DNA of 64,000 nt from Epithemia pelagica (taxonomy: Eukaryota; Protista; Bacillariophyta): assembly GCA_946965045.2 (NCBI GenBank), contig OX337230.1:2666001-2730000 (forward strand), written 5' to 3'. Numbering within the stretch: position 1 is the first letter of the stretch; every line of letters begins with the position of its first letter. The notes under the pieces were generated by a model. The model made no database searches. It was not told the DNA's origin and was given only the letters and a program-made list of their open reading frames with translations. The translations under genes were made by a program, and so were the position numbers. Shown here piece by piece: positions 6,456-60,961 of this stretch.

Positions 6456-6589
6456 TAGGAACTTGGCAACCTTTGACCAACCGTCAAGATTTGTGTTACT
6501 CATTCCATCATAGACGGTGCATTGTCTAAGATTTATCGACAGATGTAGGACGACATAATGAGAATTTCCAGATGCCAATACAACAATCT

Positions 6590-15998: not shown

Positions 15999-16014
15999 CA
16001 CACACACACACACA
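15999..16014. repeat. (CA)8 microsatellite
   Basis: Read directly. Confidence 0.9.
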
Positions 16015-16368
16015 GCCACACACTCATACACATGACATAACGTACTGTGCATTTTTCACTTTCTAAGTTGTTGTACATTTCCAATCATCACTGAATCATC
16101 TTCTTTTTCCCTTTTTCCCAGTGTCGCACGGCTGGACCTGTATACCCCTTCCGACGTGGCCCATCATAGGGCGGCGGCAGAGGGTATGCGGGGACTGTCA
16201 ACTTCCTTGTCAGACCTCTGACGACGTTCTTCAATGCATGTTTCATGACATATGGTTTCTGTTTCGATCCGGCTGTATGAACTAACCCTGCCACATGACA
16301 TATCACCCTCAGTGCATTCGGCCTGGGGCTCCTTACACAATGCACCGATTGCACTTGGGCGGCCTCAG

Positions 16369-16948: not shown

Positions 16949-17229
16949 AACTAGTAGTAAGCTCACAGTCAATATCATTACCATATCATCACGTCTTTAG
17001 TGTCCTGACTATCCCTACGATAGGACCCTTGGGTTTCCTCTGTTCTCTGACCCATGGAGAACCTAGGTATCAGTTGGTAATCGATTGTGGCTTTCCTAGA
17101 GCGTGTACTGACGGATTCTATCAGATTAACAGTGTCACCTGTCGTATTTCCCATGTTTAGTGGCCCCCAATACTCCTGTCCGTCGGATCTACAATTCTTT
17201 TCAGCAGAGTGGTGACCCAACACAGCAGA

Positions 17230-17470
17230 TTACCGTCCAGTCTGGATGTAACATTGCTGAGCAAAAAGAACATCAAGATTATGTTCAGGAATTTTTCTTG
17301 TGAGAGGATGATGAGGAGTCGCCGCGTGTCGAGTTCCCACCCAAGGACTTGCATGACTTGGCTTGGGCTGCCTATTTTATCTTCTGCGAGAATGTTCGTA
17401 CGCTTGATTGGTTCCTCTGTTGGGTGGTTTGGTCGGATGAACAAGTGCAAGACTAAGGGGACCACTTCAG
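17230..17470 (-). mobile_element. YR retroelement RT fragment
   Basis: VPLVLHLFIRP...EPIKRTNILAEDKI..SPSQVMQVLGWELDTRRLLIILSQEK. Confidence 0.75.
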
Positions 17471-19229: not shown

Positions 19230-20018
19230 GTGGGTATTATGTTTCTTTCTGATGATTTTGTCTCTGAAATGAATGCAGGACAAATGGGGAGTCTTCATCT
19301 TCTTCATCCCTCCTATGAGAGCAATTGTGTAGACTCAGTTGCTTTCCTTCAAAATGAAGAATTGGCCATGGATCAGACAAGTCTTCCATGCCTTCCTCTG
19401 TTGTATTTGTTCTCAAAGTTGTCTGATGAGATTTCTCCTGTGAGAGTATCCACTCAATTCAAAGAAGCACAAAAGGACAAATCTTTGGATGAATTGCAAA
19501 GATGTAGAGTTTATCCCCCTGACAAGTCACAGAAAAAACCAGAAGCACATTCCCGATCACATGTGTGTCGGCAAGAATCCAACGTGAAGAAGTCAAAAGC
19601 TAAGAAGAAAATTAACCACCCCAAGTGCAAGTCTCCAAAGGTGAGTGAAAAAGCTTCACCCAGGCCTGTTGGTAGCATACGAATTGGCGTAAATGATGCT
19701 GTCTTTGGTCGTGGTGGAGAAGCGAACAAGCTAAGGAAGGTATTAAAGCTGTTTGGGTCTTTAATTGACAAGCACAGCATTTCCTACGGTTCTTCAGACA
19801 ATGTTGAAAAAGAATGAATCGTCATGGAAAATATTCATGATGTAGAACAAGCAGGGGGGCGATTTTTTGTTTTACAGAAGGGAGATTTGGTTCAAACATG
19901 CAACTCTCAGCTGATCCAAACTAAGATCCGACAAAAGCTCAGAGACAAGAATATACTACCAAGGAAGAAGAGATGCTACAGTCGCAAAAAGGACACCATG
20001 AAGGTATTTGAGCTCTAA
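19230..20018 (+). pseudogene. DUF6824-domain protein pseudogene with one in-frame stop
   Basis: NDAVFGRGG...FGSLIDKH...Y...KE*IV...VEQAGGRFF...KIRQKLRD; ORFs 19230-19817 and 19824-20018 share a frame across TGA 19815-19817. Confidence 0.8.
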
Positions 20019-20364
20019 ATTTTAGCTGATTTGGAATGCGGTTGCAGTTGCTCTGTTCAGGTTCATTGTGTATGATCTACATGCACGTCATAAACAATGC
20101 CCCATGCTAGTGGTCTCTTTCGAGACTTTCGAGACTTTCGATGCCTTTTGCTTTTAACAGTACACCTTAGATAATACACCACGTTGTTCTTTAAATACTG
20201 TGATCCCCCTTTGTCTGCAAATGTGGTACGAGGAATTTTCTTGACAAAACCAGATGTTTCATCTCAAAGATCATCTTCTTCAGGATTTTTGAAAATATAA
20301 TAATCACAAACACCAAGGTGAATCATCACTAACTGCTGAATCTGACTTTTAGACCTTAGGGAGA

Positions 20365-20882
20365 GGAGACTGCAAACACCACTGACCCGCAGGATTTTCT
20401 GACACACCATTCATGTGCTTTTTTGTTACATACACAGTGTCAGAAGACTGTTGATATTGCAAAACTCCAAACATGGGCAACAAGAAGTTTGTATGAACAA
20501 ATTTATTGTGAATTGGAAATTGTGATAAGGATCATTTTTTGACATCTTCCCCAACTTAAGATATTCAGATCTTGTCTTACTGGGAGATAAACTAGGTAAC
20601 GGAGACTGCAAACACCACTGACCTGCAGGATTTTCTGACACACCATTCATGTGCTTTTTTGTTACATACAAAGTGTCAGAAGACTGTTTTGATATCACAA
20701 AACTCCAAACATGGGCGACAAGAAGTTTGTATGAACAAATTTATTGTGAATTGGAAATTGTAATAAGGATCATTTTTTGACATCTTTCCCATAACAGATG
20801 CAGCCATTGCAATATAAACAGAATCATTGTTGTTGAACATTACACGTGACTTCTTTGCTAGCTAGTACAGAACAAGTAGTAG
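20365..20882. repeat. Composite repeat: about 190-bp unit, 48-bp insert, second unit, 86-bp insert
   Basis: Units at 20365-20552 and 20601-20790; 20554-20601 equals 15110-15157; 20797-20882 matches 15740-15824. Confidence 0.9.
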
Positions 20883-21289
20883 CGACTTTTTTCCTACCCC
20901 TACAGAATTCTGTACAAACGACAGAATTCTGTATCAGTTTATTTTGCGTTTAGCTCTGTCGGAACTCAACAGACGTCTTTCGTTAAGCCCAATTCTGAAA
21001 GAGTATTTCTCCCTGTTGTGTATGGAGACAATCGTGTGATGGGGTTGCTATCAATATAAGGCAGTGTTGTAGCTGTTCTTTATTCACCTTTGCATCCAAT
21101 GGTGTCGAGATGCAACAGATTCTACCCGGAGTTCCACTGGAAAACCCCAGGCCTTTGCACTGGGAGAGAGTGGCACCGACAGGGGGAGGCTAACTTAGAG
21201 TAAGGGATAGCCAGTTGGCTGATTGTAGCTTGCCATACATTTCCTTGCATAAGTCAGCACTCAATAAGTCAGCACTCATTGTGGCATCA

Positions 21290-22078
21290 TGAAAATGGAC
21301 AAAGCGACCCAAATGGACAAAACGACCCAGTACTTCTGTGCTCAAAAGTTTATTTTTTAGGTTGCCTTTTAATGAGTCATGTCCTAAGGTTTCTGTTGCA
21401 GGATAGCCACCAGTGGACAGACAAACCAATGCTTTCATGTTGCTCTGGAACATTGAGTCTGCATGGATCCATTGTCCATATGGAGTCGTTCCTTTCTTTG
21501 CAAGATATGCTTGCTTTCTAACAAGTGAACCCAATACTTTTGTAGCAACCTCTTTTACTTTTTCAACCACCTGCCCAATAAGCCATTCACTGAAAGGGTT
21601 TGAAGCACCTTGAAGCATTCATTACTATTTCAACTTGCTGAGTATTGTCACTGATCTTCGCAGCCACATGTTTTCCTCTCTTTGTCAAAGAGTTTTCGTA
21701 CATTTTCACTTCAGATCCATCTTGAGTTTGACCATACATCAGCAGACTTTGTGCATGAAGTCTCAATACTTCACTTTCCTCCTGAGTCAACATCTTATCA
21801 ATAACAACACTGCCATTTTCTTTCACTGACCAGAGAATGTGCTTATCATCAGGCATCATTGGAAGTAGTATTGGGAATTTCCCATGCTCTGGATTGTTCA
21901 ACAGCTTTTTACCCTGATTCTGCAACCTCCTTTTATCAATCATCCTCTGATTACACACAGATTGCCCTGTTTTGTGTTGAGGTGCAGGTTTTTCATCCCT
22001 TCCTAAGGAAACACCGTGCTTCCTCTTCCTCTGGTGCTCAGGACCTTGCTTGACGCCTTTCAACAGGCTCTTTATCAA
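21290..22078 (-). pseudogene. Degraded gene, possibly a 2OG-Fe(II) oxygenase (PhyH-like)
   Basis: Two consecutive frameshifted ORFs; QWIHADS...ALVCL...PAT resembles QxxHxD...L...GAT. Weak. Confidence 0.3.
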
Positions 22079-22599
22079 ATGAAGTCTCTTTTGTGCTCAT
22101 TCTGATTGACTTTGCATTGGAGAATGACAGAAAAGTGACGTCTACGGTGTTCAGGCAGGCGGAAATTCTCTCCTGCCCACATACAATAAACTTGCTGTCC
22201 AGCGTTATGCATTGGAGAGAACCGCTTGATTAGCTCATTGGAGATTTGAATTTTTAATATTTGAATTTTGAATACATTTAAAGATTGGACAGAGCCTGCT
22301 AGTTGTGCTATGTACTGTAAATTCATTATTTCTCAACTACTCCTAGCTCTAAATCACCATACGATAAAGGCACCATCTGCCTGGGTGGGAGTGTAGGACT
22401 TGGGGAAGATAAGGAACTATATAGGATAAAACTGAAGAGAGGTGCAAATGCAGGAAAAATGGAGTTGCGGACTTTGGAGGGATGGTGGGTTATACCATCT
22501 CTTCAGAGGGATGGTGGGTTATACCATCGTGTTTGACATTGATGTGCTGTCGTAGAAGTGCTGGCAGGTAAACGGGATTGACCAAGCATTTCATTGAAG

Positions 22600-23338
22600 C
22601 ACTACGTTGCGAAGGCGTTAGATAGGTTGTACAAGGCCTTGTGATGCACATTCGGACCGTGACAATTTTTGTATACTTCTTTGACAAACTCGTACATCAA
22701 CTTGTGCCAGAAACATCTATGCCCTCGAGTTTTGGCAAAAAAAATTCCCGGTCGTTCATGGGACGGTACTTGACTTTGCCATTTGGCTAAGTAAGACTTT
22801 CTTGAATAGGGGCACCAGCAGAAACTGCTGTTATAGCTCCCGCCGAGACCTGGAACAGCATGGAAGCCAAAGTTGAACATGACAATATCTGGTAGACACT
22901 CAACAAAGTCCTGCATATTCAGAGGGACGGGATCCCTGGGCCTCCATAGCTGACAAACATATTGGCTGGGATTTTCATCTTCTGTGCTGGCATCGTCGTC
23001 ATCGGTCTCGTCATCGTCACCGGTGTCAAATTCATCTTGGTACCACTGGCCTCAGTAAAATTGGCGCAAAGATCATCAAGTCGACGTAGGACATCCTCCT
23101 TAGCCCTGCTCTTCTTGTTTTCATAGCCGATAGGAAGTTTCTTCGAGTGATAATCGGGATGAAGAATGACCATAAGTTGTTGGTCTGGTTCTTGCATGAT
23201 TTTGTAGGCTGGAAATTCAGTTGAGATTGTGATCCAAGAATGTGGAGTTGGGAATGTCAATGCTTGCGCAGAAAAATCCCACTTGTCAGCACCATTTCCT
23301 TCAATACAACATGTCCAAATAATTGTTGACCAAATCAT
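22600..23338 (-). pseudogene. Degraded unidentified gene with an acidic tract and a Cys/His-rich segment
   Basis: Frame-hopping translation DEFDTGDDDETDDDDASTEDENP...MFNFGFHAVPGLGG...CWCPYS...HRCFWH. Confidence 0.35.
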
Positions 23339-24723
23339 CAGAAGGATACGGATCAGGGCGTAGTTAATACTTTGAAGAAGATACCTTCATATTGCAGGGC
23401 GTAGTTAATACTTTGAAGAAGATACCTTCATATTGGGAGGGGCAAAGGGCAAAACATGACTGGTAATTGTGAACCAGACAAATGTAGTGTCTCTTGTGTC
23501 AAAGAAGGGACTCGTGATTGCATGCAACATCATTCGCCCAATGGCCTGACCCAGAATTCTTGTTTAATTCAGGCATATTTTGTGGTAACCAAGTATCATA
23601 GGCAAAGTAATGTCAGAGACTTGCTCCCAAGCTTTACTGAGAAGCCCCCAACCTTTACTGAGAAGCCATCTGCTTGGTCCCCCTCCGTCTTGTGTTTTAT
23701 CTGCACAAGCTGTTGAGGGTTCCACAAAAAGCATTGAGTGACAAGTTCTAAGTGCAAGAAATTTCTTATGAACGCACCTTTCACCTTTGCATCATGTACT
23801 ACCTGTACATCCCAGTTGAACAACCATAAAAATTCCTCCTGTCCAGCTCTCTGATCATCAAAATATTGAGCATTCAGATCTTCTGTCTCCTGAAACAAAG
23901 GAGAAAGTGGAGTGGTTTCATTTGGTGAATTGAACTTATTCCATTCATCTGCAAGCTTGAAGTTGTATGGAACCTGGGCCAAGAAAGTCAGTACTAACTC
24001 AACAGAAGCCTGTTCCAAACGAAGAAGGACCTACCTCTGCAAAAACCACTTTGAGATCTTTTTTGCAGAATCACTTTTTTAAAAAAAATCTTCAAGAGAA
24101 TAAAGAAATTGGAAACAGCAACTTGATTCCCTGTTATGGCAATTGCACGTGTGTGCATGCTCTCGCTTGTGATCACGTGCTCTCGCTTGTGATCAAGCAG
24201 TGCATCAATCCAGAATTGAGACTTTTTTGGATAAAATACTCTTTTTTCTTGACACAGATGGGAAGCGCCTAACTCAGACTTGAACCGCTGAAGCCTTGTC
24301 ATTGGACAAACTTCCAACGGGAACTGAAACATCTTCAGGCAAGTCACGTTGACAAACTAGCCCTAATCCTAACCCTTCACGTTGACAAACTAGACTTAAA
24401 GTAAATCAAAGACTTTTTGAAAAACATAATCACGCAAGGCGGCCCCAGCCTTCTCAGCATAACACTGGATGGTGATTGTTTCAGGTTTTGTTCAGTTCTT
24501 GAGTGGCAACTTGTCCTTAACCCATAGTAGCAGCTAAAGCCGCTGTCCTCAGATGCCCGATCTCTGATTTCGTGTTCTCCGTTGACTCTGAAGTCTTCAA
24601 CCGTCGCCCACTGTAGGTTATGTTAGGGGATTGGTGGTGGACTCTGAATTGAGTTGGCCAGTGGTTGGGTTTTTTCTCATCATCCTTCCGGATCTTTGAT
24701 CTTGTGTTTTACATGCACATGAG

Positions 24724-25607
24724 TTGGCACATGAGGACAGAGGACACCTAGTCAATCTTATGAAGTACAAGCCCGTCAAGTCACCTCTTTCTGAACCTCT
24801 TATCCAGCATTTACAAGAGCACGATAGGAATGTAATCATTCAAAGAAAAATGGGAGGAAGAAGGCTATTATGCATAATGGAAAACAAAAGCTCTCTGCAC
24901 GGAACAGACAAGTACTCCAATGCTCCTTCTGAGCCAAATCTGGAGATTATTTCTCTTCCAAGCCTCAACAAGGTGTTCATGTTCCAAAGCTTCCTTGCAG
25001 TTTCAGACAACATGGATTGTTGTCAATGATAAAGCTTGATACAGATGATGAGTGTTTGGGTGTTACTGCAATGGGAATGAACTTTGAGGACAGTCAAAGC
25101 CAGGAACTACTTTTCCATCGTATTGCCAGGTGACAAGCATGGATTGCACATTCAAGAGTAATTCAAGAAGCTATGTCTGCTAAGAATAATCTTCATAGGG
25201 GTTCATGCAAGGATGGTCTCAATTTGAAATATATTCAGTTTGGATACAGAAAGTCTTATGCGAAACACGATTTGTTTGGTCAATACAAGTTCAAGAAAGG
25301 CATTGATCAGCAGGCCCAAGAGAAACTAGAGGAAGGAATCTCTTCGTTGATCAATGATATTGAATCAATTAGATTCAGGTCACTAAAGTCACCACTTGGA
25401 TTGACTTCATTCAATAACTCCCTCCAACATGCATTAGTCATACCAACTGCTTCTGCTACCAGCAACGATGCAGTTTCAACTCAATTTTCAATTGGATTTG
25501 ACTACTGGAGTCCTGTCCACCAGGACAATAACTACTTCTGGAGCATTCTTGGCTGTGTACCAAGAGAAATCAGCGTTGATGAAAATATCTCCTTCTTAAA
25601 TCCTTGA
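24724..25607 (+). pseudogene. TET/JBP-like 2OG-Fe(II) dioxygenase pseudogene, truncated after HxD
   Basis: YIQFGYRK...TQFSIGFDYWSPVHQDNNYFWSIL aligns with FSSIAFGKNVFLPAHTDKDFGYSVV at 55.4 kb; HQD at 25518-25526; in-frame TGA at 25131. Confidence 0.6.
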
Positions 25608-26226
25608 CTGCGCTGTCCTGCATCCCTGTAGCTACAGAATGGATCTCTTGCCCAAGACTCTGATTCTACATACTAGGAGTACCTTTGTAACATTTCTCTG
25701 CTGCTCTGCAACCAAGAGACATCCCAGGGGTCCCACCAGTAGTAGCTGGATCAATTTTATTGCACGTGGGCAGTGGGCACAGGAGGCGACCAAGAGACAT
25801 CCCATGGGTCCCACTGGTAGTAGCTGGATCATTTTTATTGCATGTGGGCAGTCGACACAGGAGGGAAGGAGATGTTGTCCCACACACACCCCCAAGCACA
25901 GATCCTATTGAAGCCTAACAATACTGATAATCCCTGTGGTTTGCCTGTTGAACTGTTCATGACAAGGAAATGAAAAAGTAAGGAACCATGTCACAGCAAG
26001 TCACAACCAACGTATTGGAAATTGGAAAGCCCCACCGATTCTGGGCCACACAGAGTTTCCTGATCTTTGATTATGCCAATAAAACCTTGATGGTGGATGA
26101 TATCATGACATCTGAACCAAAGAAAGATCCCCTTAGCCCTACATCTTCCCGTGAGGGTCACACATGTCAGGCAGATGAATCACCATCTTCCTTTTGTCAG
26201 TTGCCAGATAGGCTGGTGGGAGCACC

Positions 26227-26333
26227 TGTTTGGAGTATTGCAACATCAATAGTCTTGTGGCACTGCGTGCAACGAATAAGCGCATGAACCTTTGGTCAGT
26301 AAATCCTGTGGGTCAGTGGTGTTTGAAGTCTCT
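26227..26333 (+). pseudogene. F-box-like remnant, with inverted paralogues inside the 20365 and 20601 repeat units
   Basis: CLEYCNINSLVALRATNKRMN...NPVGQWCLKS versus CLEFCNINSLL/TLYVTKKHMN...NPAGQWCLQS on the minus strand at 20365-20474. Confidence 0.4.
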
Positions 26334-26627
26334 CCCCATGGTCTACAATTCAGATTTAACGTGGAATCATGAAACTCGGCAGTTTGTCATTTTTCAGCAA
26401 GATCACAAAGCCATTTGAAAATGGAAGTATTGTTTGTCCGCTTTTCCTTCCTTACTGCAGGAAGGAAGTTCAGTCAAGTGGTGGTCTCTCCAATCTTTAC
26501 GATAGTCAAAGGCAGGTTTCTTGGGTGGTGAAGAACAGAGAGGTGCAACCAACTTATAAATACACTTCATCCCAAATTGGGGGTATTCCTTGTGAATTCG
26601 CCACTCTGTAGGATGGGGCTACAAGTG

Positions 26628-26880
26628 AGGTAGTGATTCCCAGCCATTGTAAGCGGATGGATCCCCTCTCTTTGGATCCGAGTGCTGCTTCCAAGTGATG
26701 CCATTGTCATCTTCCCATATATCGTATGCTGTTTTGGCCAAATTGCTAGTTGACCAAGGTAGTGATTCCCAGCCATTGTAAATGGATGGATCCCCTCTCT
26801 TTGGATCCGAGCACTGTTTCCAAGTGATGCCATTGTCATCTTCCCATGCATCGTATGCTGTTTTGGCCAAATCGCCAGTT
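26628..26880. repeat. 129-bp (43-codon) tandem duplication inside a degraded Trp-rich gene
   Basis: Units start at 26628 and 26757; minus-strand translation repeats AKTAYDxWEDDNGITWKQxSDPKRGDPSxYNGWESLP. Confidence 0.9.
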
Positions 26881-27779
26881 CAGTATCTCCACTAGCTCAC
26901 GTGTCGTGGCTCAGCATTTTCTTTCATAATCATACAACAGAGATTTTGTTTTCCGTACGGTTTTTCCTTCAACCACGACATTGTCATTGTCTTGGGCTTT
27001 TGCGTGACATTTTTGAGGTCACCGAACTCTTGCCTGAATTCCATGCCGACAGTATCAATGTTTTTGCTTTCGAAGCGCCATGCCGTGGTTTGAATTGCTA
27101 TTGCACTGCGATTCTTGGAGAACGTGCTAATGAACTTGGAGGCATACATATGCATACTTTGTTTTGTATCCGCATCCTGTGGACACAATGCGGCACTTGC
27201 TAAGTCTCTTCCGAAAGTAGAATGGCTCCAATGACTTGATGTGTTGGTCTTAGATGAACTGGGCCATGTGTCTGCAGAATTACTATCAGTGCTGGCAAAA
27301 TGCACTACTACTTTTCTGGGTTGAAGATATACCAGTGGATTGGACCAGGGCAGTGACACCCATCCATTCAGCGGCTCAATAGATCGTTTGTTGAATGAGT
27401 GATCGTTTACTGGCAAAGTGTAACCATTTTGTCTGACATTCCAACACCCGTGATCCATTTGCCACCCCATGTACAATAGTAGCACTTGCAGACGCCATTT
27501 GCATCAATTCTCATTAAGCGGACATTACGTTGGTGCTCGATGTAAGGAAACGTCATTCCAGAATTGCTCGTGAGCAGTAACCAATCCCGTCTATAGAGGT
27601 ACACAACCAGTCCAATTCAATCTTATCCATACTTTGCATTAAGTAGCATCAAACATATTCTAAAAGAATGACATAGCTAGGTAGCCAGTTGGCAAGACCT
27701 AACTGTAACTGAATGCAACAGACCACTAAACCAATTGATTGCAGTGCAATGTCTCATGCCATGACATGGAAACATCATC

Positions 27780-28260
27780 TGAGGCTAGCCGATAGGAAAT
27801 TAATGGAAGAAGCAAAAGTAGCTAAAATAATGAATGACAGCCATGGTGAGTAACTAGAGATTCTATTTTCAATGGCCTCAACTACCGAGTCAAACATAGC
27901 CTCTGTTGTATGCACGCTCCATCGGCCTCTCTTAGCAGTGTTGCGATGCTTGGCAATTTGACCAACTCCTGGGATTTGGCGCAGCTTGTTGGCAACATAA
28001 AACATCAAGCCTGTATGTACTCCTTCCACTAGAACAATACAGCTATTGGCCAGAAATCTGTTCTATTTCAAGATAGCTTTGGTGTAGTTGGGAGCTTCTT
28101 CGGGGACATGTTGAACCTTGTGGAAAATAAAATTCATATTCTTCGAATATTCCTTTTGGAGAATTTGGATCAGTTTCCTAGCATCGTCTTGACGGCACTG
28201 GATGTCATAAGCCTTAGTCGAGACAAACAGAAATGGACAAGAGTGAATTTGTAACTAATT
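27780..28260 (-). mobile_element. LINE (L1-like) ORF1 fragment with stop
   Basis: TKAYDIQC...YTKAILK*NRFLANS..VLVEGV...LMFYV...GV...RGRWSVHT resembles recalled diatom LINE ORF1. Confidence 0.55.
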
Positions 28261-41846: not shown

Positions 41847-42254
41847 CAAGATGGACAACTATAATTTGAAGGAATTATCCAGGGAACACAGAGTCACTGT
41901 CTTACAAGTTTAAAGAGAAAAGTTAGTCAATTCAATTACTATGAATTATTATGAATCAGGACTTTATCAAAGATTCTAACAGCAAGATGGACAACGTTAA
42001 TTTGAAGGAAATATCCAGGGAACACAGAGTCACTGTCTTACAAGTTTAAAGAGAAAAGTTAGTCAATTCAATTACCATGAATTATTATGAATTAGGACTT
42101 TATCAAAGATTCTAACAGCAAGATGGACAACGTTAATTTGAAGGAAATATCCAGGGAACACAGAGTCACTGTCTTACAAGTTTAAAGAGAAAAGTTAGTT
42201 AATTCAATTACTATGAATTACAATGAATTAGGACTGTGTCAAAGATTCTAACAG
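41847..42254. repeat. 136-bp AT-rich tandem repeat, 3 copies
   Basis: Units start at 41847, 41983 and 42119 (CAAGATGGACAAC...GATTCTAACAG). Confidence 0.96.
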
Positions 42255-43023
42255 CATGACAATCTGTCTTTACATAGATGGTATAGTGAACAAGGACACC
42301 CTTGCACATGTTGTCAAGGTTCTCTGAACTGTGTGCAGCAGACTAACACTACAGACTTGGAATATTGATAAATCAAAACCAGAATCCACCAAGTTTATTG
42401 TAGCCATAGAACACGGGTCGGAATATGTTACCGTAGAACTTGACTCAATCCAGGCTGTGGACTCTTCAAGTTCCCATTTCTGTGAATAGCGCATGAAATT
42501 CCTCTACTGCAGCGATTGTCATGCAATCATAGATGCCAAACGTTTGATTGGTTTTTTTGTTGACAATATGAATACCGAATGATTGGGATGGTCAGATATT
42601 AGACATTTATACCCTTAAAATGTAGATCGATAACCCCAGGCCCGACTCAGAGAAAAAGTGTCTACTCACAGCCAAAAGGCATCAATTCAAGAGCCTCCAA
42701 CTTCCACAGAATGACAAAGTCAGAGGCTTTAGAATTGTTAAATCCTTGCCCCTGGATAATCAAATGCAGGTTCCAACCGTACACAACAAGAAAAAGATAT
42801 AAAATCCCATTGTTTCAGACTACATGTATTATCCTTTTGAGGCCATTTAACCAACATTGCTTACATGTAACCAATGTTTCTTACATGTATTGTCCGTGCA
42901 TGTTTTTTCCGTGCATGTTTTGTCCGTACATGTTTCCTTACATGTTTTGTCCGTTGTAGTCTATCAATCAATTTGCTTACATGTCTTGGTCGTTTGAGTA
43001 TATGTAATCAATAAGTTCTCAAA

Positions 43024-43374
43024 ATGTTGCCTGCTATCACTGCTCCTGGAAAGATTAATGAGATGACTGCTTCTGGCGAAGGAGAGCAAAATAGTCCAAA
43101 CATTGAGCAAAATGGTCCTGAAGCTCCAGAACAAGACAATCCTGAAGTTTTGGACTCTGCCGCTTCTGGAAAGAACAATGAGACAACTTTCACTGGTAAA
43201 GTAGAGCAAAATGGCCTGAATATAGAGCAAAATGGTCCGGACATAGATGACTTTGCCGGTGAAGGAGAGCAAAATGGGCTGAATACAGAGAAAAATGTTC
43301 CGAATGTAGATCAAAATGCTCCTGCAGTTCCGGAACTAAACAATCTTGGAGTTTTCAACAGACAGAGTTATTGA
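43024..43374 (+). CDS. Low-complexity ORF with EQNG-type repeats
   Basis: Three GxxEQNxxNxExNxP-like units in 116 open codons. Confidence 0.35.
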   Translation: MLPAITAPGKINEMTASGEGEQNSPNIEQNGPEAPEQDNPEVLDSAASGKNNETTFTGKVEQNGLNIEQNGPDIDDFAGEGEQNGLNTEKNVPNVDQNAPAVPELNNLGVFNRQSY

Positions 43375-44299
43375 CTTCACCAAAGACATGATGATAACCC
43401 CAGTTACCATGAACCGGATAGTTAATTGTAACCCTTACCCTAATGGATATGACCATGTAGCAAAGCTCTACATTGAGACGACATGCTATCATCAAGAGAA
43501 CACTGCCCATTTTTAATTGTGTTTCATTGCCTGACATTCTAGGTCATACTGCTTTTTCTATCCTCAAGACCATTGTAAAAATAAAATCTGACTCTGAAAG
43601 TGACCCCTACCGGACTGTGGGTCTGCATATTTTTTTCAGGACATTGTACACTCTGGACCATTGAATGAAGATGACACTGACCACATTGCCAAATTGTGAC
43701 AATTAAGGATCACTGACCAAGCATACATTTCCTCTAGGGAAGATGAGGTTCACAAACTAGCAACTCCCAGAGCCACCGACAGGATGGAGCTATCAAAGGT
43801 CAAGTCTCGTTGCCGACACAGGCATGAGGCATTGAATGGATCAAGAAGAACTTCCACATTCTGTCTGGCACATACTGCCATTCCCTGGACAACCATCAGG
43901 AAGCTTTCGAAGCAAGTTGTGCCCTTGTCCACTATCAAATCATGAATAGTGCTACATTGTTTAACGTCTAGAGAGTAGGTGGAAAGTAGGTGAAACATGG
44001 CAAAATAATGTCATCCCATTCATGATTCGGCTTGTGATCGTTTTCAAATTGGTGCCAGAGATTAGGAAGCTCTGGCAGCAATTTCTGGACAGCTGCTTCA
44101 CAGCGGTCCATGAAGTTACTTGGAAAGTCGTAGAATGTCGAGCTGGAAATAACATCTTCTTCACGCGGAAGAAGGAGCCTCATCTTCCCTTTCCTGTCAA
44201 ATGTTTCCCATTTCTCTTTTGAAAAGGGTATCTAGGCAGGATCTTGTTGTTTGGTTTTCATGGTTACCATTGACTGTTGTTTTGTGTCATCGCATCGTG

Positions 44300-50299: not shown

Positions 50300-50950
50300 G
50301 ACAATTTGGTTTTGCCCCCCAGATTGTACCCCGCCAAAAAAGGTACTCGGATGCTGCGCGGCCTGTTACTCGCACCTGCAGAATATAAAAACAAGAAAGG
50401 TGATTACACCCCACCACGCTATGCCATTGTTAATGGCCTATCAATCGGGACACCTCCTAAGTGTCTAACTGAACTGAATGAGGTAGAATTGGCCATGATA
50501 GCGCCTGCTAGGACAAACAAACATATTTTTCATCTACAGCTGGTAGCCATAAATCAATTATGGCATGGCATTCACTGTACTACAATGACCTTGAGGCCGT
50601 CCATGGTGTTGTTAATTGGTGGAGTGAGGCAACCATGTCACAACACCGGCATGAAGAAACTGGTGATAGTTTGGGTGATGGAGAAAACACAGAAAAGAAG
50701 TTGTACATCCCTACAATTGCGGTGGTACTGTGTTGCCCATTTACTCCGTCCCAGCACACAAAAGTGTACGAAAAAACTAAAGTGAGATGGGACAAAATTC
50801 AATATGCGCTGAGGTGGTTGAAAGAGAATAATTTGCTATATGCAGAATGTGACATCCCACCACGTGCAAAGGTAAAACCAATTGTTGTTGACAAAGATGA
50901 GGTTGATTCCGAATCTTCCTCTAATGTGGAGCTGGTTTTCGATATCAATG
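50300..50950 (+). mobile_element. Helitron-associated DUF6570 domain, frameshifted
   Basis: CAACYSHL / PRYAIVNGLSIGTPPKCLTELNEVELAMIAPAR / KVRWDKIQYALRWLKENNLLY. Confidence 0.8.
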
Positions 50951-52329: not shown

Positions 52330-52960
52330 TGTGCCATTTGCTATTTTTTGTCCACTTTTGCATTGTTATTCACAAGGACAGGTCCGTTGTAGAACAGCAG
52401 CATAGCGGGATCAAAGGGGCCCGAGAAACCTGATGGTTTGCAATGACCTTCTCCACAATGATGCCAGAAATAATGCCTTGACGCATTTGATGGAGAACGA
52501 TAGTGGCAGTTCCCTTCTTTAATTTTCAGAGAGCTTGACAAGACAAGGATGCAGCTTTCCTCGATATATCTTATGTCAGGTGCGGAGAGCAGGTGTTGAA
52601 AAAAGCCCAGTATTGATGTAGACTCGATCAATATTTTTGTAGCATGCATATCTGAGATCAGGAGGAAGAGTTAACTTGTTTTCATCAACCACTCTTGTGT
52701 TTAATAAATCAATATCTTTGTGAGTCCCCCATACAATATCATCAGAGAACCTGTGCATACCATTCAATTCTTACTAACAGTTGACACTCCCACGAGACTC
52801 GGGGATCTCTTCATCATATATTTTCATGTACCCATTAGCTGGTTGTTATTGACACATATCTCCACAGAAGATAATGTCGATACCACCATTCACTACCAAA
52901 GAAGTACTTCCTCTGGACCTTTCTCGACAACGAGATAGTTCATACAAACTACGGTGTCTC
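52330..52960 (-). mobile_element. PIF1-family (Helitron) helicase fragment, degraded
   Basis: GGIDIIFCGDMCQ*QP (motif III), LNGMHRFSDD, N..RVYINTGLF, CGEGHC...FDPAMLLFYNGPVLVNNN.V. Confidence 0.8.
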
Positions 52961-55118: not shown

Positions 55119-55730
55119 CTAATAGTTATTACAGATACACTGCTCAAGGTTGTTCAGGGGGATAGAGTTGTCGTTCTTCCCAACGACTGCAGTCTTCATG
55201 TAAAATGAGGAGGCACAATAAACATCATCGTGGGTTACCCTTTTTGAAACACAATGATACACTTGTGGAATAAATATGATAAAGTCAAGATTTCTCATTG
55301 TTACTTTCTGCCCATGCTCTGGGAAAACAAAGTAGCATAGGATGTCTTCACCTGTCTTCTCGGGCTCTCTCACGAATGTCATGACAACCGAATAACCGAA
55401 GTCTTTGTCTGTATGGGCTGGTAGGAAAACATTCTTTCCGAATGCAATGGAAGAGAAAAAGGTTGATTCTTTGCCTTCAAAAGAGAGAGATTCGATTTTC
55501 TGGATTGCCTTCATCACGGAAAAACCAATTAAAAAGGAGGAGTCGACCCAATGACAGAAGTATTCTTCCACTTGTCGTACAAACCAAATAAGGGTTGCCT
55601 TTCCTCTCCAATGTGGAAGTTTCATTTTCGAATTGACAATGCCTTTTCTTCCACGGTTGGCATGTTTGCCAATTGCAATATAAAAAGAGTTGTGGGAACA
55701 TAGTTCTTTGCAAAAGAGTTTAGGTATTAG
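55119..55730 (-). CDS. TET/JBP-like 2OG-Fe(II) dioxygenase domain
   Basis: Open for about 200 codons; FSSIAFGKNVFLPAHTDKD (HTD 55415-55407), CYFVFPEHG.KV.MR..DFIIF, distal His in VYHCVS (55256-55254), SFYMKTAVVG. Confidence 0.78.
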   Translation of the reverse strand, partial: LIPKLFCKELCSHNSFYIAIGKHANRGRKGIVNSKMKLPHWRGKATLIWFVRQVEEYFCHWVDSSFLIGFSVMKAIQKIESLSFEGKESTFFSSIAFGKNVFLPAHTDKDFGYSVVMTFVREPEKTGEDILCYFVFPEHGQKVTMRNLDFIIFIPQVYHCVSKRVTHDDVYCASSFYMKTAVVGKNDNSIPLNNLEQCICNNY

Positions 55731-56312
55731 TTATCATTCCTGTGTGTCCCGACATCGAAGATGGTTGCTTCTTTTGAAGCATTCCGCGACAACTCCATTC
55801 AGGCTCTGGTCTTATGTTCATGTTGTTGTTCCAATTGTGATTTCTGGCTTCCAAGCATCTGTGATTGCTTGTTGAATCAATACATGGATTCTCTCAGGGA
55901 TATCTGGTGTATACCATGGAGGGTCGTATTCCGGGTATTGTTTCTTAGTCATGTCGACTGGGCCTCGGCATATCGACGGATTTATGGAACTGATAATGTG
56001 GTTGCCTCCTGCAGTTTTCCTGTCAAACCAAGAGATGTAAGCCATGATGTGTCCGTCCATTGATTTTATTGGATGTAGTTGGCTCCGTTGACATGCTTAT
56101 TTTCTGCAGAACCACAATATAGGTTTTTCAGTTCGAGCTGAAACCTTTCCGGGACACCAGATTTGTTGTGAATCGTAAATAGGTGAAACATTGCTGCCTG
56201 AATGTTGCTATTTGCTGACTTTGATATATATCCATCCTCAGTAGCACCAGTGTTGTTGTTATTGTGAACACACCTTCAATTCATTAAAATGGCTATATTC
56301 GTTGTAGTTATG

Positions 56313-56561
56313 ACATTATCGCCCATCATGGTGATAGAAGGCCAGGGGGATGCGGGACAAACTTACCTACAATCTAATTGTCCCATGTACAAACCAGCAT
56401 AATTTGGGGGAGTCGACATCTTTTTATTGCATTGAAGTTATTACATTATCGCCCATCATGGTGATAGAAGGCCAGGGGGATGCGGGACAAACTTACCTAC
56501 AATCTACTTGTCCCACGTACAAACCAGCATAATTTGGGGGAGTCGACATCTTTTTATTGCA
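56313..56561. repeat. 130-bp period direct repeat, each unit with a GGGACAA...TTGTCCC hairpin
   Basis: ACATTATCGCCCATCATGG starts at 56313 and 56443. Confidence 0.93.
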
Positions 56562-57059
56562 CACACCATAGAATGAGATATGCATGTTTCTAAAACATCA
56601 AGTGAATGTCAATTGACCTAGCCAACATGCAGTCATCTCAATATTGCCTTATGAATTTTTTCAATATTGCTTTTTTATGTCCCAATAGATTAATGATGGG
56701 AATTTCATTTTTTGATTCCCATTGGAAGCAAGGTATTGGTTTTAAATACCGACTGACTCACCGAAGTAGGAGGAAATTTTGTATTGCCGGGAATTTTGGT
56801 TTTAAATACTGTGTGGGGGTGGGCCAAAGTTCCCCAAAAACTTGGAGTGACATGAACATGTATAAGTAAACTTTGTGAAGCGTCTAATTCACTCTCCAGA
56901 AATGAATCATTAGGGAAGAAGTAAAAGCCCTCCTTCCGATGGAAAAGAGAAGCAGAAGAGAAAAGCTCTCCCTAGCTCTCGATGTTTTGCACACCACAGT
57001 CAACAAGTGGGTGAAGAGTGGACTTCTCAAGAGCCACAGGACCAAACAAGTTATCTCGT

Positions 57060-57485
57060 CTCATCATGGCTGTCAACAAATGGTATCACAAAACTAAACC
57101 TCAACAAATGGTATCACAAAACTAAACCTCAGGTTTGGGACCCGTGTCCCAAAGACAGTGCTGAAGGAAGCTCTTGAGTTGGACCAGGCCAATGGTAATA
57201 CTACCCTGTGGTGGGATGTCATAAAGAAAGAGATGGCTGCAGTCCGTACCACATTCATGATCCTTGACGATGGTGACAAGCCACCCCCCTACATCACAGT
57301 TCATTAAATGCCTTATGGTCTTTGATGTCAAGATGCAAAACTTTTGACGGAAGGCTCGACTGGTCGTGGGGGACACATGATGGAGGCACCTAGAACCCTC
57401 ACCTATGCAAGTGTTGTATCATGGGAGTCAGTGAGAATTGCACTCACAATTGCTGTATTGAATGATTTGGAAGTGAAGACTTCCA
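57060..57485 (+). mobile_element. pol: Copia RT N-terminal fragment, CpG-decayed, with a 28-bp duplication
   Basis: RLIMAVNKWYHK...KEALELDQANGN...KKEM...VFDVKMQNF*RKARLVVGGH...YASVVSWESVRIALTIAVLNDLEV. Confidence 0.9.
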
Positions 57486-57489
57486 ATCT

Positions 57490-57960
57490 GGCAGCAAGAC
57501 CAAACATGGCCATGGCTACTTCTGCAAATGCAATGCTAAGTCATTCATCAATGTCCACAAAGGATAGGAAAAGCACCACACAAATCCGCCAAATGGTTGA
57601 GGTTCCATTGTTTATCAAGACAGACTCCATGCACAACAATGATATACTCCGTAAAGTATCAAACATGGGCCAACATGTGATTTTCAGCAGTTTTCAGCAG
57701 AAACAATACACCATTCTTCATTACAATGCAAATGTATGGTATGTCCTCAGGAAATCCATCTCTCTCAAATCAGAGTTCCAGAAATATTCAATACATGGGT
57801 TGTCACCTCCATCCTTTAAGAAAGCCTGTTGCCTGAAGCTAAACTTGGATGGGGTCTTAACCTGTGATTGTGGATACAAAAAACGCAATGGGATTCCATG
57901 TCATCATTTGTTTGCTATAGAAGAAGAATGTGACCTATCTGACAAACACTTCCTTCTTCT
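57490..57960 (+). mobile_element. MULE-like transposase C-terminal fragment with SWIM zinc finger
   Basis: LTCDCGYKKRNGIPCHHLFAI fits the CxC...CxH SWIM motif. Confidence 0.7.
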
Positions 57961-58284
57961 GCCCTTCCATACAACTTGTCATCAACAGAGTGACAAGTTG
58001 AGTCTGATAGAGAAGTTCTATGCAACTGCATAAATTGCTTCAAATTGGTGTTCAATTTGTAATTATCATGTTCATCATCTTCCAGCAGATGTAACTTTGA
58101 CATCCCAGGACCACCATGATAGAGTGGAATGGAAAGATTGACTGAAATGGATTGTTGCATTAAGTACACTGTTGCATCCTCACAATCATTTGGAACTTGT
58201 CTCACACGATGAGGTTTGTTATCCCTCTTGTTGCTTGCACATGAGAACTTGTCTCACATGTTGAGGCTTGTTATCAGCTTAACC

Positions 58285-58525
58285 CTATTACACACTTTCA
58301 ATTGCCTTCCTCCATACCAAGGGGCACTCGGCAGAACAGGTTGCTCGACACACCGAGGAGATTCTTAACACAGTTGGATTTACACAATATGACTTGTTTG
58401 GATTTACCCAAGACGACTTGTTTGCTTCTGTGAATGATAATACCAACTCAGCTGTGTTGGCTGGTAAATATATCACCGGACAGAAGCGTGCCGGCAAGTG
58501 CAAAATGCAGAAAGCCGACATCTGG
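58285..58525 (+). mobile_element. hAT-like transposase core fragment
   Basis: IAFLHTKGHSAEQVA...ASVNDNTNSAVLAGKYITG...GKCKMQ resembles the GHxA...V-x-D...CxxH region. Confidence 0.6.
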
Positions 58526-58895
58526 CAGGTCGATCTTAGAGAAGGGAAAGATTGACCTCACGGGAAGAAGCAATATGATGAGAAGGGTTCTACAGTGGGG
58601 ACTCTCCTTCGACTAACACAGCCAGTACATGGCACAGGCAAGGTGTTTGTACTTGACTCCGGCCTTTCTGTGCTGCAGGCTTTTGTCGAGCTCAACTAAA
58701 AAGGGGTCTTTGCACATGCTCTCATAAAGAAGAGTCGGTACTGACTGAAGCACGCACCAGGTGATGACATCATTGTCCACTTCAAGAATGAGCCGATTGG
58801 GAAAAATGATGCAATCAAAGGAGTGCTTGATGAAGTCCCCTTCTATTTGTTTGGCATGAAAGAACCAGATTACACCATGCAAATCATGTCAAACA
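58525..58895 (+). mobile_element. piggyBac transposase core fragment with stops
   Basis: EGKD*P...GSTVGLSLRLTQPVHGTGKVFVLDSG...KGVFAHALIKKSRY*...KEPDYTMQIMS. Confidence 0.88.
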
Positions 58896-59129
58896 ACAGT
58901 GGCTATAGAGTTTAATTGCCGAATGTGTTCTTTTGAACCCAACCGCAACTGAGAGGGACAGTATGTTGTCTCATGGTGGCTTTGATTGTGCATGGAGTGT
59001 CTGCTCAACTGGCAGAACAGTGTTCAATGACAATATGAGCAGGTTTCTCAATGATCAATTAACTTTTCCACAGAAAGTTGCTGGTGTGAAATTAGTTCAA
59101 AATCAGCTGGATGGGTATAGGTTTTATAT

Positions 59130-59349
59130 ATCTCCATGGACTGCATCCATGAACTGCATTTCTAGATGTTTGCCACATCATTCTACACATCCACTTCATT
59201 GGGTTAAGTTGAACATGGGTGTTATAACCAAGAGCAAGGTATCTCCATGGACTGCATCCATGGACTGCATTTCTAGATGTTTGCCACATCATTCTACACA
59301 TCCACTTCATTGTGTTAAGTTGAACATGAGTGTTGTAAGCAAGAGCAAG
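59130..59349. repeat. 111-bp tandem duplication
   Basis: ATCTCCATGGACTGCATCC starts at 59130 and 59241. Confidence 0.93.
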
Positions 59350-59639
59350 ATATTATACAGGAGGATCACATAAAACCACACTTTCTACAAATAGCCATAG
59401 TTAGTCTCACTCAGACTTATGTAGTCTGAGACAACAAACTGACTTAAAATAGGAGAAGAATTGGCAGCAGCTGCAGCAAGAATATTCATGGGAACTCTGG
59501 ATCTTTCATCTTTGATGCACTCACTGTGGTTTGTGGCAGTCAATATCAAATAAAGAGTCTCTTGGTGGGCCAGTTGCTGCAATGGCAGGAGATGACACAG
59601 ATAGCCTTGGCTGTAATAAAGAGGAGCTCAAATTGATTG

Positions 59640-60961
59640 GCCACCATCCATAGCATAGTTTTCCAAACGGCATCGGATTCGCGATCAGCGAGAGCGGTGA
59701 AGCGATCCACTGTTATTCCCAATGATTCAGGAAGGCTTGTTTCGAGCTCTTCCAATCCTTAACGCGGAGCTGCGCGAGTCCTGCACGAACATCCTGCACG
59801 TTAGTCTGAGCTACTATGGAGCGTTCGTGGTGCTCACATATCGCTGTAACTATAGCCTGGGCATCTGCACGTTCTTCGTGACGTTTGACCATTATGCGCC
59901 CAGAGGCGGTCTGGAGCACACGACAGAACACGGAGTACATGAACTGCTGAATCTCTGGCCAAAGGGCAGATTCCTTCCGGGTCTTAGGGTAATAGCTAGG
60001 GTCGAAGACCTGATGAGTCCCATGGACTCTAGCTGTACTCTAGCTGTAGCAAGGGTGTCTCTATACCAAGCATATCATTGCTTGTCATCCTTGAAATTGC
60101 TATACATGCTAATATCCCGCTTGACTCCTTTCCTGAAGTTCCTATCATCTAGCCCATCATCACTACTATCACTATCATCGTCATCAGTAAGATGGACATA
60201 GCTAGAGGATGAACTTGAGGAGCTATCACTACTAGGAGGGTTATGGATAAATAGCTGGGGATCAAGAAAGACTTCGTCTTCGTTGATAGTAGGAGGTCCA
60301 CGTGTACCGGGTGTAGGAGTAACGCTACGGGTTATTTTATTCCGTAGGTTAATAATCGGCATCCACGTCAGAGATCTCTGGGTACCCATGAAGGGAGGGA
60401 CGGTACCAGGGGACAGATTCTGAAAAGGTGGAGGACAAGAGCGGTTAGAGTCTTTCTTCTTCTTGTGTTTCTTCTTCTTGCATTTCTTGGCAGAATGCTG
60501 AGAAGTGGATTGCTCACCTTCTAACGGGCCACGCTGAGGATTAGATTCTTCGTAACAGACGAAGTCGTCATGCGTGATGAGAATGATGTCATGTCCGCTC
60601 CGGAACTGAGACACGAGGACGTCGTAGGCAAACTTGTTGACACAAACAAGGCGGTAGATTTCCTCGAACGTGAGCAAACGGACAGGTTCGTTGTAGTCGT
60701 CGATGGGATGGCTGGCGCGCATTTGGTCGAGAGTGCCGGGATCGATCTCCAAGAACATTGCCAAATGGTACAGGTTAGTGTACGTCATGGGGCATGTGAT
60801 GACGCCGCCAAATGAGAGGAAGCGATGCGACGTTGTGAAGGAGATGGCTTAGTGCAGTGACCTGACGTTCAGTGCTGGGGAGAAATCATGGATTGGGTGT
60901 ATTCCAAGTTATTGGTAGAACACTCCGACATGGTTGAAACGGGATCTCCGCTAGCAGACAT
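59640..60961 (-). pseudogene. gag: CoDi gag, copy B, frameshifted and 3'-truncated
   Basis: ATG at 60961; FRKGVKRDISMYSNFKDDKQ*, WYRDTLATAR, QFMYSVFCRVLQT.SGRIMVKRHE...DAQ, FLNHW. Confidence 0.88.

What the first reader, a model, noticed from the sequence alone, without database searches (positions are those of the whole stretch)
55119..55730. TET/JBP-like dioxygenase near Helitron parts: candidate transposon-borne DNA-modifying enzyme
Seen: about 200 stop-free codons with HTD, a distal His and the F-x-F-P...G...D...F...H strand pattern. A PIF1 helicase remnant and a DUF6570 remnant lie 2-5 kb away. Established: TET/JBP enzymes oxidise 5mC or thymine in DNA and travel with KDZ transposons in fungi; diatoms methylate TEs at CG. 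Seen: where TET enzymes have the 2OG-binding RxS...Y, this copy reads VYCASSFY with no Arg. Inference: a mobile-element-encoded anti-silencing or base-modifying enzyme, possibly with altered co-substrate use (the algal TET homologue CMD1 uses vitamin C). Physical linkage to a Helitron is not proven in this shuffled region.
Basis: partly seen in the sequence, partly recalled or inferred. Interest (0 to 1): 0.78.

Follow-up and report, generated by a model that had tools for sequence, protein, structure and literature searches.

The report
Truncated transposon-borne TET-like dioxygenase relic
This is the surviving back two-thirds of a gene for a TET-like DNA-base-oxidising enzyme, of a family that rides on jumping genes in diatom-like algae. 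The family is real and interesting, but this copy is a dead remnant, and its tie to the nearby Helitron scraps is not shown.

Summary
Window 55730..55119 (minus strand) is a 203-codon stop-free stretch with HTD, a distal His, the F-x-F-P..G..D..F..H pattern and VYCASSFY without Arg. A PIF1 scrap lies 2.2 kb away and a DUF6570 scrap 4.3 kb away.

The ORF belongs to a large unannotated family: 680 cluster representatives, nearest Atlas clusters from Bacillariophyta. Pfam does not recognise the family. Its fold is TET/JBP: the ORF model matches NgTET1 at Z 11.3, and a full-length relative matches TET2 at Z 18.7, against 12.2 for the best non-TET chain.

The full catalytic domain is about 330 aa, and this copy holds only the C-terminal 200 or so. 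A sister copy, 90% identical in DNA, continues 315 bp further 5' into the family's N-terminal part. That part is absent from the window. The near-identical duplicate or allele carries a 106-bp deletion. This copy is therefore a relic, not a working enzyme.

Intact relatives sit beside an intact Helitron Rep/helicase and beside a Plavaka transposase. Here the Helitron scraps are not collinear with the ORF, so linkage is unproven. No family member has a basic residue on strand VIII where the 2OG-binding Arg would lie; what this means for the co-substrate is open.

The scan has noted this family before elsewhere in this genome (66 notes). TET-carrying transposons, Helitrons included, are published for fungi.

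The parts
55119..55730 (-). 5'-truncated relic of a TET/JBP-fold dioxygenase gene: 203 stop-free codons plus stop. It covers the C-terminal ~200 aa of a ~330-aa catalytic domain (HxD, distal His, stacking Tyr, Lys).
55119..55625 (-). Longest ATG-initiated ORF within the relic (168 aa). Its ATG (codon 36) lies inside the fold, after two conserved beta-strands, so it is not the native start.
55700..55740 (.). Approximate 5' breakpoint. Similarity to the sister copy L064 and to all relatives ends here, and two in-frame stops sit at 55731-55736.
52600..52947 (-). PIF1-type helicase remnant with three in-frame stops. It is on the same strand as the ORF but 2.2 kb downstream of it.
50387..50859 (+). 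DUF6570 remnant (a Helitron-associated N-terminal domain), on the strand opposite to the ORF.
57480..58033 (+). C-terminal remnant of a MULE-type transposase with a SWIM zinc finger, 74-87% identical in DNA to a MULE remnant that lies next to another TET-like copy (L002). Its position relative to the ORF differs between the two loci.

Best explanation
The ORF is a dead, 5'-truncated copy of a gene for an Fe(II)-dependent dioxygenase of the TET/JBP fold. It belongs to a large, unannotated family found mostly in diatom-like eukaryotic DNA. Intact members are 300-600 aa with a ~330-aa catalytic domain at the C-terminus, and they are carried as passenger genes by several kinds of DNA transposon: a Helitron and a Plavaka element were seen here, and Mutator-like and Ginger-like elements according to earlier notes of this scan. 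The inferred job of intact members is to flip a modified base, most likely 5-methylcytosine, into the iron site and oxidise or otherwise modify it, which would counter methylation-based silencing of the carrier element. The copy in this window kept only the C-terminal ~200 codons, sits in a graveyard of transposon fragments, and cannot make a complete enzyme. Which transposon brought it here cannot be told. Shown: homology, fold, truncation, decay of sister copies, and transposon context of relatives. Inferred: substrate, anti-silencing role and co-substrate.
For: Family size and conservation.
Language-model features point to Tet_JBP clusters (score 0.96).
ORF model: pLDDT 90, pTM 0.84. Foldseek's top hits are CcTet and NgTET1, with CMD1 further down behind a run of PHD2 entries. 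In VIA-align the top 16 entries are all TET family: NgTET1 Z 11.3 over 166 aa, TET2 10.9 over 184, CMD1 10.6 over 180. AlkB follows at 9.0 over 127.
Full-length relative P0009: pLDDT 95. In an unbiased search of 48,161 chains it matches TET2 at Z 18.7 over 262 aa, NgTET1 at 15.6, CMD1 at 15.1 and CcTet at 14.6; the next chain scores 12.2.
Truncation: relatives have a median of 158 aa before the domain, and that N-terminal part is conserved (42 hits). The sister copy L064 is 89.6% identical over window 55237-55697 and continues upstream in frame to P0009 residue 14. Nothing like that exists in the window.
Decay: L003, which is 97-99% identical over 12 kb, has a 106-bp deletion in the ORF. L064 has two in-frame stops and a lost 3' end. 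The window copy has odd residues at near-invariant positions: G148 is L and N154 is I.
dN/dS of window versus L064 is 0.31, so the copies diverged largely under constraint before they decayed.
Transposon context of relatives: L007 has DUF6570, then Helitron_like_N/PIF1 (1589 aa), then the TET-like gene (626 aa), all on one strand. L010 has a Plavaka transposase, E 6e-16. L023 has the TET-like gene followed by DUF6570 on the same strand.
Against: No Pfam model reaches threshold, so the family assignment rests on fold and on weak profile hits (3 of 82 to PF20515, 1 of 82 to Tet_JBP). Many relatives sit in contigs with no recognisable transposase, so the claim that the family is always transposon cargo is not shown. 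Element termini were not defined for any locus.
Confidence: 0.8

Rival explanations
1. The relic is what is left of a Helitron that carried the TET-like gene. The PIF1 scrap 2.2 kb downstream on the same strand belongs to the same element, as in locus L023, where the TET-like gene precedes the DUF6570/Rep-helicase genes.
For: An intact relative lies within 700 bp of an intact Helitron Rep/helicase on the same strand. L023 has the TET-like gene followed 3.2 kb later by a DUF6570 ORF on the same strand. In the window the ORF and the PIF1 scrap share a strand and lie in that order.
Against: The order is the reverse of L007. About 5-6 kb of Rep/helicase would have to be deleted between the ORF and the scrap, and nothing recognisable lies between them. 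The DUF6570 scrap is on the other strand. Four other TET-like loci of the same assembly have no Helitron parts within 10 kb. In the quick tree the window copy groups with same-assembly copies, not with the Helitron-borne protein. The region is dense with unrelated transposon pieces (Copia, MULE), so proximity is expected by chance.
Confidence: 0.2
2. The relic comes from a Mutator-like (MULE) element that carried the gene. The SWIM/MULE remnant at 57480-58033 is the rest of that element.
For: Another copy (L002) lies 850 bp from the 3' end of a decayed MULE transposase. That MULE piece is 74-87% identical to window 57481-57939. Earlier notes of this scan describe Mutator-like elements with a TET-like gene in this genome (not tested here).
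Against: The geometry differs: gene and transposase are convergent in L002, but the MULE piece lies upstream and divergent in the window. The window copy is broken at its 5' end, with unrelated DNA and a Copia-like piece in between.
Confidence: 0.15
3. The ORF is a functional short gene, translated from codon 36 or spliced to an upstream exon, and encodes an active or regulatory DSBH protein.
For: There are 203 codons without a stop. The metal triad, Tyr177 and Lys179 are intact. dN/dS against a sister copy is 0.31.
Against: The conserved N-terminal third of the domain is absent from the window. The ATG lies inside the fold. The near-identical duplicate or allele has a 106-bp deletion in the same ORF. 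Near-invariant G148 and N154 are replaced. The low dN/dS is what is expected for divergence between once-active source elements.
Confidence: 0.06

Closest known systems
Transposon-encoded TET/JBP dioxygenases of fungi (Iyer et al. 2014 KDZ elements; Kojima 2025, PMC12730594: 11 DNA-transposon lineages including Helitron and Plavaka)
   Same: A TET-fold passenger gene sits beside the transposase genes of different DNA-transposon superfamilies. Relatives of this ORF lie next to a Helitron Rep/helicase and next to a Plavaka transposase. CcTet is Foldseek's best hit, and a few family members touch PF20515 weakly.
   Different: The host range differs: the nearest Atlas clusters are Bacillariophyta, whereas the paper covers fungi only and mentions no diatom or stramenopile. 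No Pfam model reaches threshold. The family has HxD, not the HxE of Kojima's PE type. The copy here is a fragment.
NgTET1 and human TET2 catalytic domains
   Same: Same double-stranded beta-helix with the same extra elements: Z 11.3 (NgTET1, ORF model), and Z 18.7 (TET2) and 15.6 (NgTET1) for the full-length relative. The HxD...H triad is present. An invariant aromatic residue sits where Tyr1902/Phe295 stack on 5mC. This mapping is inferred from the aligned ranges and residue numbers in PMC7854593.
   Different: About 13% sequence identity. Six residues before the stacking Tyr, where Arg1896/Arg289 hold the C5-carboxylate of 2OG, there is no basic residue: 0 of 82 in the whole strand. A Lys (80 of 82) stands where TET has His1904/His297.
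CMD1 of Chlamydomonas (vitamin C-dependent 5mC glyceryl transferase, PMC7854593)
   Same: TET fold (Z 10.6 and 15.1). The canonical C5-carboxylate contact is not used. A basic residue sits two positions after the stacking aromatic (Arg418 in CMD1, Lys179 here).
   Different: This family has a hydrophobic residue there. No evidence bears on vitamin C use.

Membership tests
TET/JBP dioxygenases | Fe(II) facial triad HxD...H | tested here: met
   H106, D108 and H159 are present in the ORF. H106 and H159 are invariant and D108 is present in 81 of 82 relatives.
TET/JBP dioxygenases | DSBH fold closest to solved TET-family structures rather than other 2OG oxygenases | tested here: met
   ORF model: the top 16 VIA entries are all TET family, Z 9.2-11.3 over 158-188 aa, against AlkB at 9.0 over 127. 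Full-length relative: TET2 18.7, NgTET1 15.6, CMD1 15.1, CcTet 14.6, against 12.2 for the next chain.
TET/JBP dioxygenases | Match to Pfam Tet_JBP (PF12851) or Tet-like PF20515 above the curated cut-off | tested here: not met
   The ORF has no hit even at E<=10. Among 82 relatives, 3 touch PF20515 (best E 3e-4) and 1 touches Tet_JBP (E 1e-3). Profile searches of PDB sequences find no TET.
TET/JBP dioxygenases | Arg at the start of DSBH strand VIII that binds the C5-carboxylate of 2-oxoglutarate (Arg1896 in TET2, Arg289 in NgTET1) | tested here: not met
   No Arg or Lys occurs in the six positions before the invariant Tyr in any of 82 sequences. The window has Tyr171 at that place and relatives have Val/Ile. 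Equivalence of positions is inferred from aligned ranges and PMC7854593.
TET/JBP dioxygenases | Aromatic residue that stacks under the flipped base, six residues after that Arg position | tested here: inconclusive
   Tyr177 is invariant. It falls where Phe295 of NgTET1 maps by end-anchored arithmetic. No residue-level superposition was available.
TET/JBP dioxygenases | Complete catalytic domain (N-terminal helices and strands plus DSBH, about 330 aa in this family) | tested here: not met
   The window copy covers only the part matching P0009 residues ~115-331. The N-terminal part is present in sister copy L064 but absent from the window.
TET/JBP dioxygenases | Oxidation of 5mC or thymine in DNA | not testable with these tools
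   This is a biochemical assay. No member of this family has been characterised, as far as the searches showed.
TET-carrying DNA transposons | The gene lies between the termini of an element that also encodes its transposase | tested here: inconclusive
   Relatives: same-strand adjacency to a Helitron Rep/helicase and adjacency to a Plavaka transposase, but termini were not mapped. Window: no intact transposase, and similarity to other copies ends at the ORF borders.
Helitron | Rep (HUH) plus PIF1-type helicase ORF collinear with the cargo | tested here: not met
   The window holds only a ~116-codon PIF1 scrap with stops (52947-52600, minus strand) downstream of the ORF and a DUF6570 scrap on the plus strand. 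No Helitron_like_N part was found.
Helitron | 5'-TC and 3'-CTRR termini with a subterminal hairpin | not tested
   Without further copies the ends cannot be placed. The inverted-repeat scan of 48-64 kb found only one short palindrome.

The most novel reading that the evidence does not exclude
Intact members of this diatom-type family are active DNA-modifying enzymes that lack the 2-oxoglutarate-holding Arg altogether and use another co-substrate or another way of binding it, as CMD1 does with vitamin C. They would write or erase a DNA mark not yet described in diatoms, and Helitrons, Plavaka and other transposons would carry them to escape CG-methylation silencing. The relic here would then be a fossil of that arms race.
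Probability: 0.2. Interest if true: 0.75.

Novelty: new variant of a known kind. Interest (0 to 1): 0.35.

Why it matters
Transposon-carried TET enzymes are published only for fungi. A second, very divergent family doing the same in diatom-like algae would show that stealing a demethylation-type enzyme is a recurrent transposon strategy wherever the host silences by cytosine methylation. This family occurs on Helitron and Plavaka elements in relatives and lacks the canonical co-substrate Arg. It would also point to an unexplored DNA-modification chemistry in a major group of marine primary producers. The locus in this window adds little to that: it is a decayed fragment. Its main use is as one more dated copy, and it led to the intact Helitron-linked relative.

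Tried and rejected
1. Pfam, PDB-sequence and PDB-profile searches gave no usable hit. The family assignment had to come from fold.

2. I looked for an upstream exon or N-terminal part. tblastn of 151 relatives, and blastn and tblastx of the sister copy's 5' part against the whole window, found nothing. The in-frame ORF 55818-56060 has no Pfam hit and no similarity to relatives.

3. I tested collinearity with the intact Helitron of L007. It fails on order and strand.

4. I first read a unique one-residue insertion (S174) in the window copy from alignment A1. The closer alignment A2 shows the loop length is shared with near relatives, so I dropped it as an alignment effect.

It worked with 10 sequences.

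6. A tree to tie the copy to a carrier type: only the quick tree finished. The window copy groups with same-assembly copies at SH-aLRT 85, with no well-supported link to the Helitron-borne protein.

8. Model coordinates are not returned by the tools, so I could not measure which conserved basic residue (R146, R164, K179, R26) faces the iron site.

9. Two paper searches for TET-like genes in diatom transposons found nothing. This is not proof of absence from the literature.

Full report
**What is in the sequence**

On the minus strand, 55730..55122 reads 203 codons without a stop and ends with a stop at 55121-55119. Two stops lie directly upstream. The first ATG is codon 36, giving the 168-aa ORF 55625..55119.

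The two neighbouring remnants are real:
- A DUF6570 piece at 50387-50859 on the plus strand (Pfam E 2.2e-5; E 1e-14 against the DUF6570 protein of an intact Helitron).
- A PIF1-helicase piece at 52947-52600 on the minus strand, with three in-frame stops (E 5e-6).

**Is it a real gene family?**

Yes. The word-based search found only four relatives, all from one ENA assembly. The exhaustive search found 680 cluster representatives at E<=1e-3 and 321 at E<=1e-10. None of the clusters looked up carries a name beyond 'hypothetical protein'.

In 82 aligned domains, H106, H159 and Y177 are invariant. D108, D110, F134, F136, P137, G140, D149, F153 and K179 are at 90% or more.

In most relatives the domain is the C-terminal part of a 300-600-aa protein, with a median of 158 residues before it. 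The 120-180 residues just before it are themselves conserved: 42 proteins hit the first 125 aa of P0009.

**What fold?**

Sequence methods do not place the family:
- The ORF has no Pfam hit at E<=10.
- Only 3 of 82 relatives touch PF20515 (Tet-like, best E 3e-4) and 1 touches Tet_JBP (E 1e-3).
- PDB sequence and profile searches are blank.

Protein-language-model features point to Tet_JBP clusters (score 0.96; 22 of 30 hits).

The AlphaFold model of the ORF, built with the 82-sequence alignment, is confident (pLDDT 90, pTM 0.84). Foldseek puts CcTet and NgTET1 first; CMD1 also appears, lower down behind a run of PHD2 entries. In VIA-align the 16 best entries are all TET-family structures:

| Structure | Z | Aligned residues |
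|---|---|---|
| NgTET1 | 11.3 | 166 |
| TET2 | 10.9 | 184 |
| CMD1 | 10.6 | 180 |
| CcTet | 9.8 | 164 |
| AlkB (first non-TET) | 9.0 | 127 |

Because the margin for a 200-aa fragment is modest, I also folded a full-length relative, P0009 (336 aa, 38% identical to the ORF). That model has pLDDT 95 and pTM 0.93. I searched it without Foldseek pre-filtering against 48,161 PDB representatives:

| Structure | Z | Aligned residues |
|---|---|---|
| TET2 | 18.7 | 262 |
| NgTET1 | 15.6 | not noted |
| CMD1 | 15.1 | not noted |
| CcTet | 14.6 | not noted |
| Gibberellin oxidase (first non-TET) | 12.2 | not noted |

The family therefore has the TET/JBP fold.

The nearest ESM-Atlas structure clusters are unannotated clusters whose few members with recorded taxa are Bacillariophyta (TM 0.77-0.80). 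Phage Tet_JBP (0.69) and basidiomycete PF20515 (0.71) follow. That is my only evidence that the organism is a diatom. I did not test it otherwise.

**This copy is a relic**

1. The ORF covers only the part matching P0009 residues ~115-331. Two conserved strands (residues 16-24 and 31-34) lie before the only ATG.
2. A sister copy in the same assembly, L064, is 89.6% identical over window 55237-55697. It continues in the same frame a further ~315 bp upstream and aligns there to P0009 from residue 14. Neither that DNA nor any relative's N-terminal part has a counterpart anywhere in the window. The window copy is thus broken at about 55700-55740.
3. L064 itself has two in-frame stops and has lost its 3' end.
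4. L003 is the same locus at 97-99% identity over 12 kb, either the other haplotype or a recent duplicate. It has a 106-bp deletion inside the ORF.
5. The window copy has unusual residues at near-invariant positions: G148 is L and N154 is I.
6. All relatives above 50% identity are short fragments of 88-203 aa.

dN/dS between the window and L064 copies is 0.31 (18.5 synonymous and 23.5 non-synonymous differences). This fits divergence between once-functional source elements followed by recent decay. CpG observed/expected is 0.33-0.6 across 54-60 kb, as expected for methylated repeat DNA.

**Which mobile element?**

Relatives give clear cases:
- In L007, a 10.7-kb JGI metagenome contig, a DUF6570 protein (313 aa), a Helitron_like_N/PIF1 Rep-helicase (1589 aa) and the TET-like protein P0008 (626 aa, 39% identical to the ORF) follow one another on one strand, with gaps of about 100 and 700 bp.
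- In L010 the TET-like gene lies near a 1101-aa Plavaka transposase (E 6e-16).
- In L023 the TET-like gene is followed 3.2 kb later by a DUF6570 ORF on the same strand.
- In L002, from the same assembly as the window's relatives, a copy lies 850 bp from the end of a decayed MULE transposase.
- Many other loci show no recognisable transposase.

The second refutation criterion, homologues never linked to mobile elements, is therefore not met either.

In the window itself nothing ties the ORF to a carrier:
- Similarity to every other copy stops at the ORF borders.
- The PIF1 scrap is downstream of the ORF, the reverse of the L007 order.
- The DUF6570 scrap is on the other strand.
- Nothing recognisable lies between them.
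- The MULE/SWIM remnant at 57480-58033 is placed differently from L002.
- A Copia-like piece lies between that remnant and the ORF.
- Four other same-assembly loci have no Helitron parts within 10 kb.
- In a quick maximum-likelihood tree the window copy groups with same-assembly copies P0003 and P0004 (SH-aLRT 85), not with the Helitron-borne protein.

I put the Helitron origin at about 0.2 and a MULE origin at about 0.15. The rest is undetermined.

**The missing Arg**

According to PMC7854593, TET2 Arg1896 and NgTET1 Arg289 hold the C5-carboxylate of 2OG. The base-stacking aromatic residue (Tyr1902, Phe295; Phe416 in CMD1) follows six residues later.

By the aligned ranges, Phe295 maps onto the family's invariant Tyr177. 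This equivalence is inferred, not a residue-level superposition. In the six positions before that Tyr, none of the 82 sequences has Arg or Lys. The window has Tyr171 there and relatives have Val/Ile.

It does not follow that 2OG cannot bind. R146 (78 of 82 basic), R164 (67 of 82) and K179 (80 of 82) are conserved, and other 2OG oxygenases place the basic contact elsewhere (my own knowledge: FIH and JmjC use a Lys on another strand). K179 sits where CMD1 has Arg418 and TET has His, which are contacts to the base. Model coordinates are not returned, so I could not test which residue faces the iron.

**Comparison with what is known**

Transposon-borne TET/JBP genes are established in fungi. Kojima 2025 (PMC12730594) lists 11 DNA-transposon lineages, including Helitron1, Helitron2 and Plavaka, and proposes escape from methylation silencing. 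That paper mentions no diatom or stramenopile. Two searches of the held library for such genes in diatoms found nothing.

This scan has already noted the family many times on other DNA of the same genome: 66 notes, covering Mutator-like, Ginger-like and 21-25-kb elements and the missing Arg. None of those notes mentions a Helitron. I used them as leads only. I re-derived the fold and the missing Arg here. I did not test the Mutator and Ginger linkages.

**Verdict**

It is right about the fold and about the family's life on mobile elements. It is wrong in treating this copy as a candidate enzyme. The Helitron link here and altered co-substrate use remain unproven.
- The family is a new variant of a known kind.
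- This locus is an ordinary decayed fragment of it.

- No contig looked human.

Noticed in passing
window 25173-25607 (+): A second, more divergent TET-like fragment: a 144-aa ORF with the family's RG...KY..G motifs and an H-Q-D triad start, ending shortly after it. hhalign against the full-length family profile gives probability 75%, E 2.4e-5, profile positions 117-246. tblastn to P0055 gives E 2e-5.
   Followed up: partly
L007 1694-10087 (JGI metagenome 3300028420): An apparently intact Helitron gene set (DUF6570 protein, then a 1589-aa Helitron_like_N/PIF1 protein) is followed on the same strand by an intact 626-aa TET-like gene. None of the earlier notes the word searches returned for this genome mentions a Helitron carrier. 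Termini were not mapped.
   Followed up: partly
L010 290-7267: A 1101-aa Plavaka-type transposase (Pfam E 6e-16) lies near a 493-aa TET-like gene, with an ankyrin-repeat gene between them. This is the pairing described for fungi, here in a metagenome contig of the diatom-type family.
   Followed up: partly
L030-L034 (five marine metagenome contigs): A conserved same-strand block of five large ORFs (about 1280-1415, 440 = TET-like, 500, 380 and 1351 aa), none with a Pfam hit. It may be a large unclassified element or a conserved host region.
   Followed up: no
L002 6286-10525: An N-terminal-to-middle TET-like piece (6286-6650) and a C-terminal piece (10001-10525) flank a Harbinger-type DDE_Tnp_4 gene and a DUF6818 gene. 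Either the TET-like gene was split by a Harbinger insertion or these are two separate fragments. The matched ranges overlap, so this is unresolved.
   Followed up: no
window 56302-56561 and 59129-59350: Two local tandem duplications (2 x 130 bp at 97% and 2 x 111 bp at 95%) lie in the repeat-rich DNA upstream of the relic. The sister locus L003 has one unit fewer of the first.
   Followed up: no
window 57344-57480 (+): The start of the 229-aa ORF that ends in the SWIM finger looks like a Copia reverse-transcriptase piece (61% over 36 aa to an RVT_2-type ORF in L065). The ORF is therefore a chimera of two transposon fragments.
   Followed up: partly
L020 and L024: In two related contigs the TET-like gene is followed by a convergent DEAD/Helicase_C gene (Pfam E 8e-13 and 1e-10). 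This recurring neighbour is not a known transposase.
   Followed up: no
window 16000-28000 and 42000-44000, 56000-60000: CpG observed/expected falls to 0.33-0.5 in these blocks, against 0.75-1.2 elsewhere, while GpC stays near 0.8-1.0. This is the signature expected of long-methylated repeat DNA.
   Followed up: no
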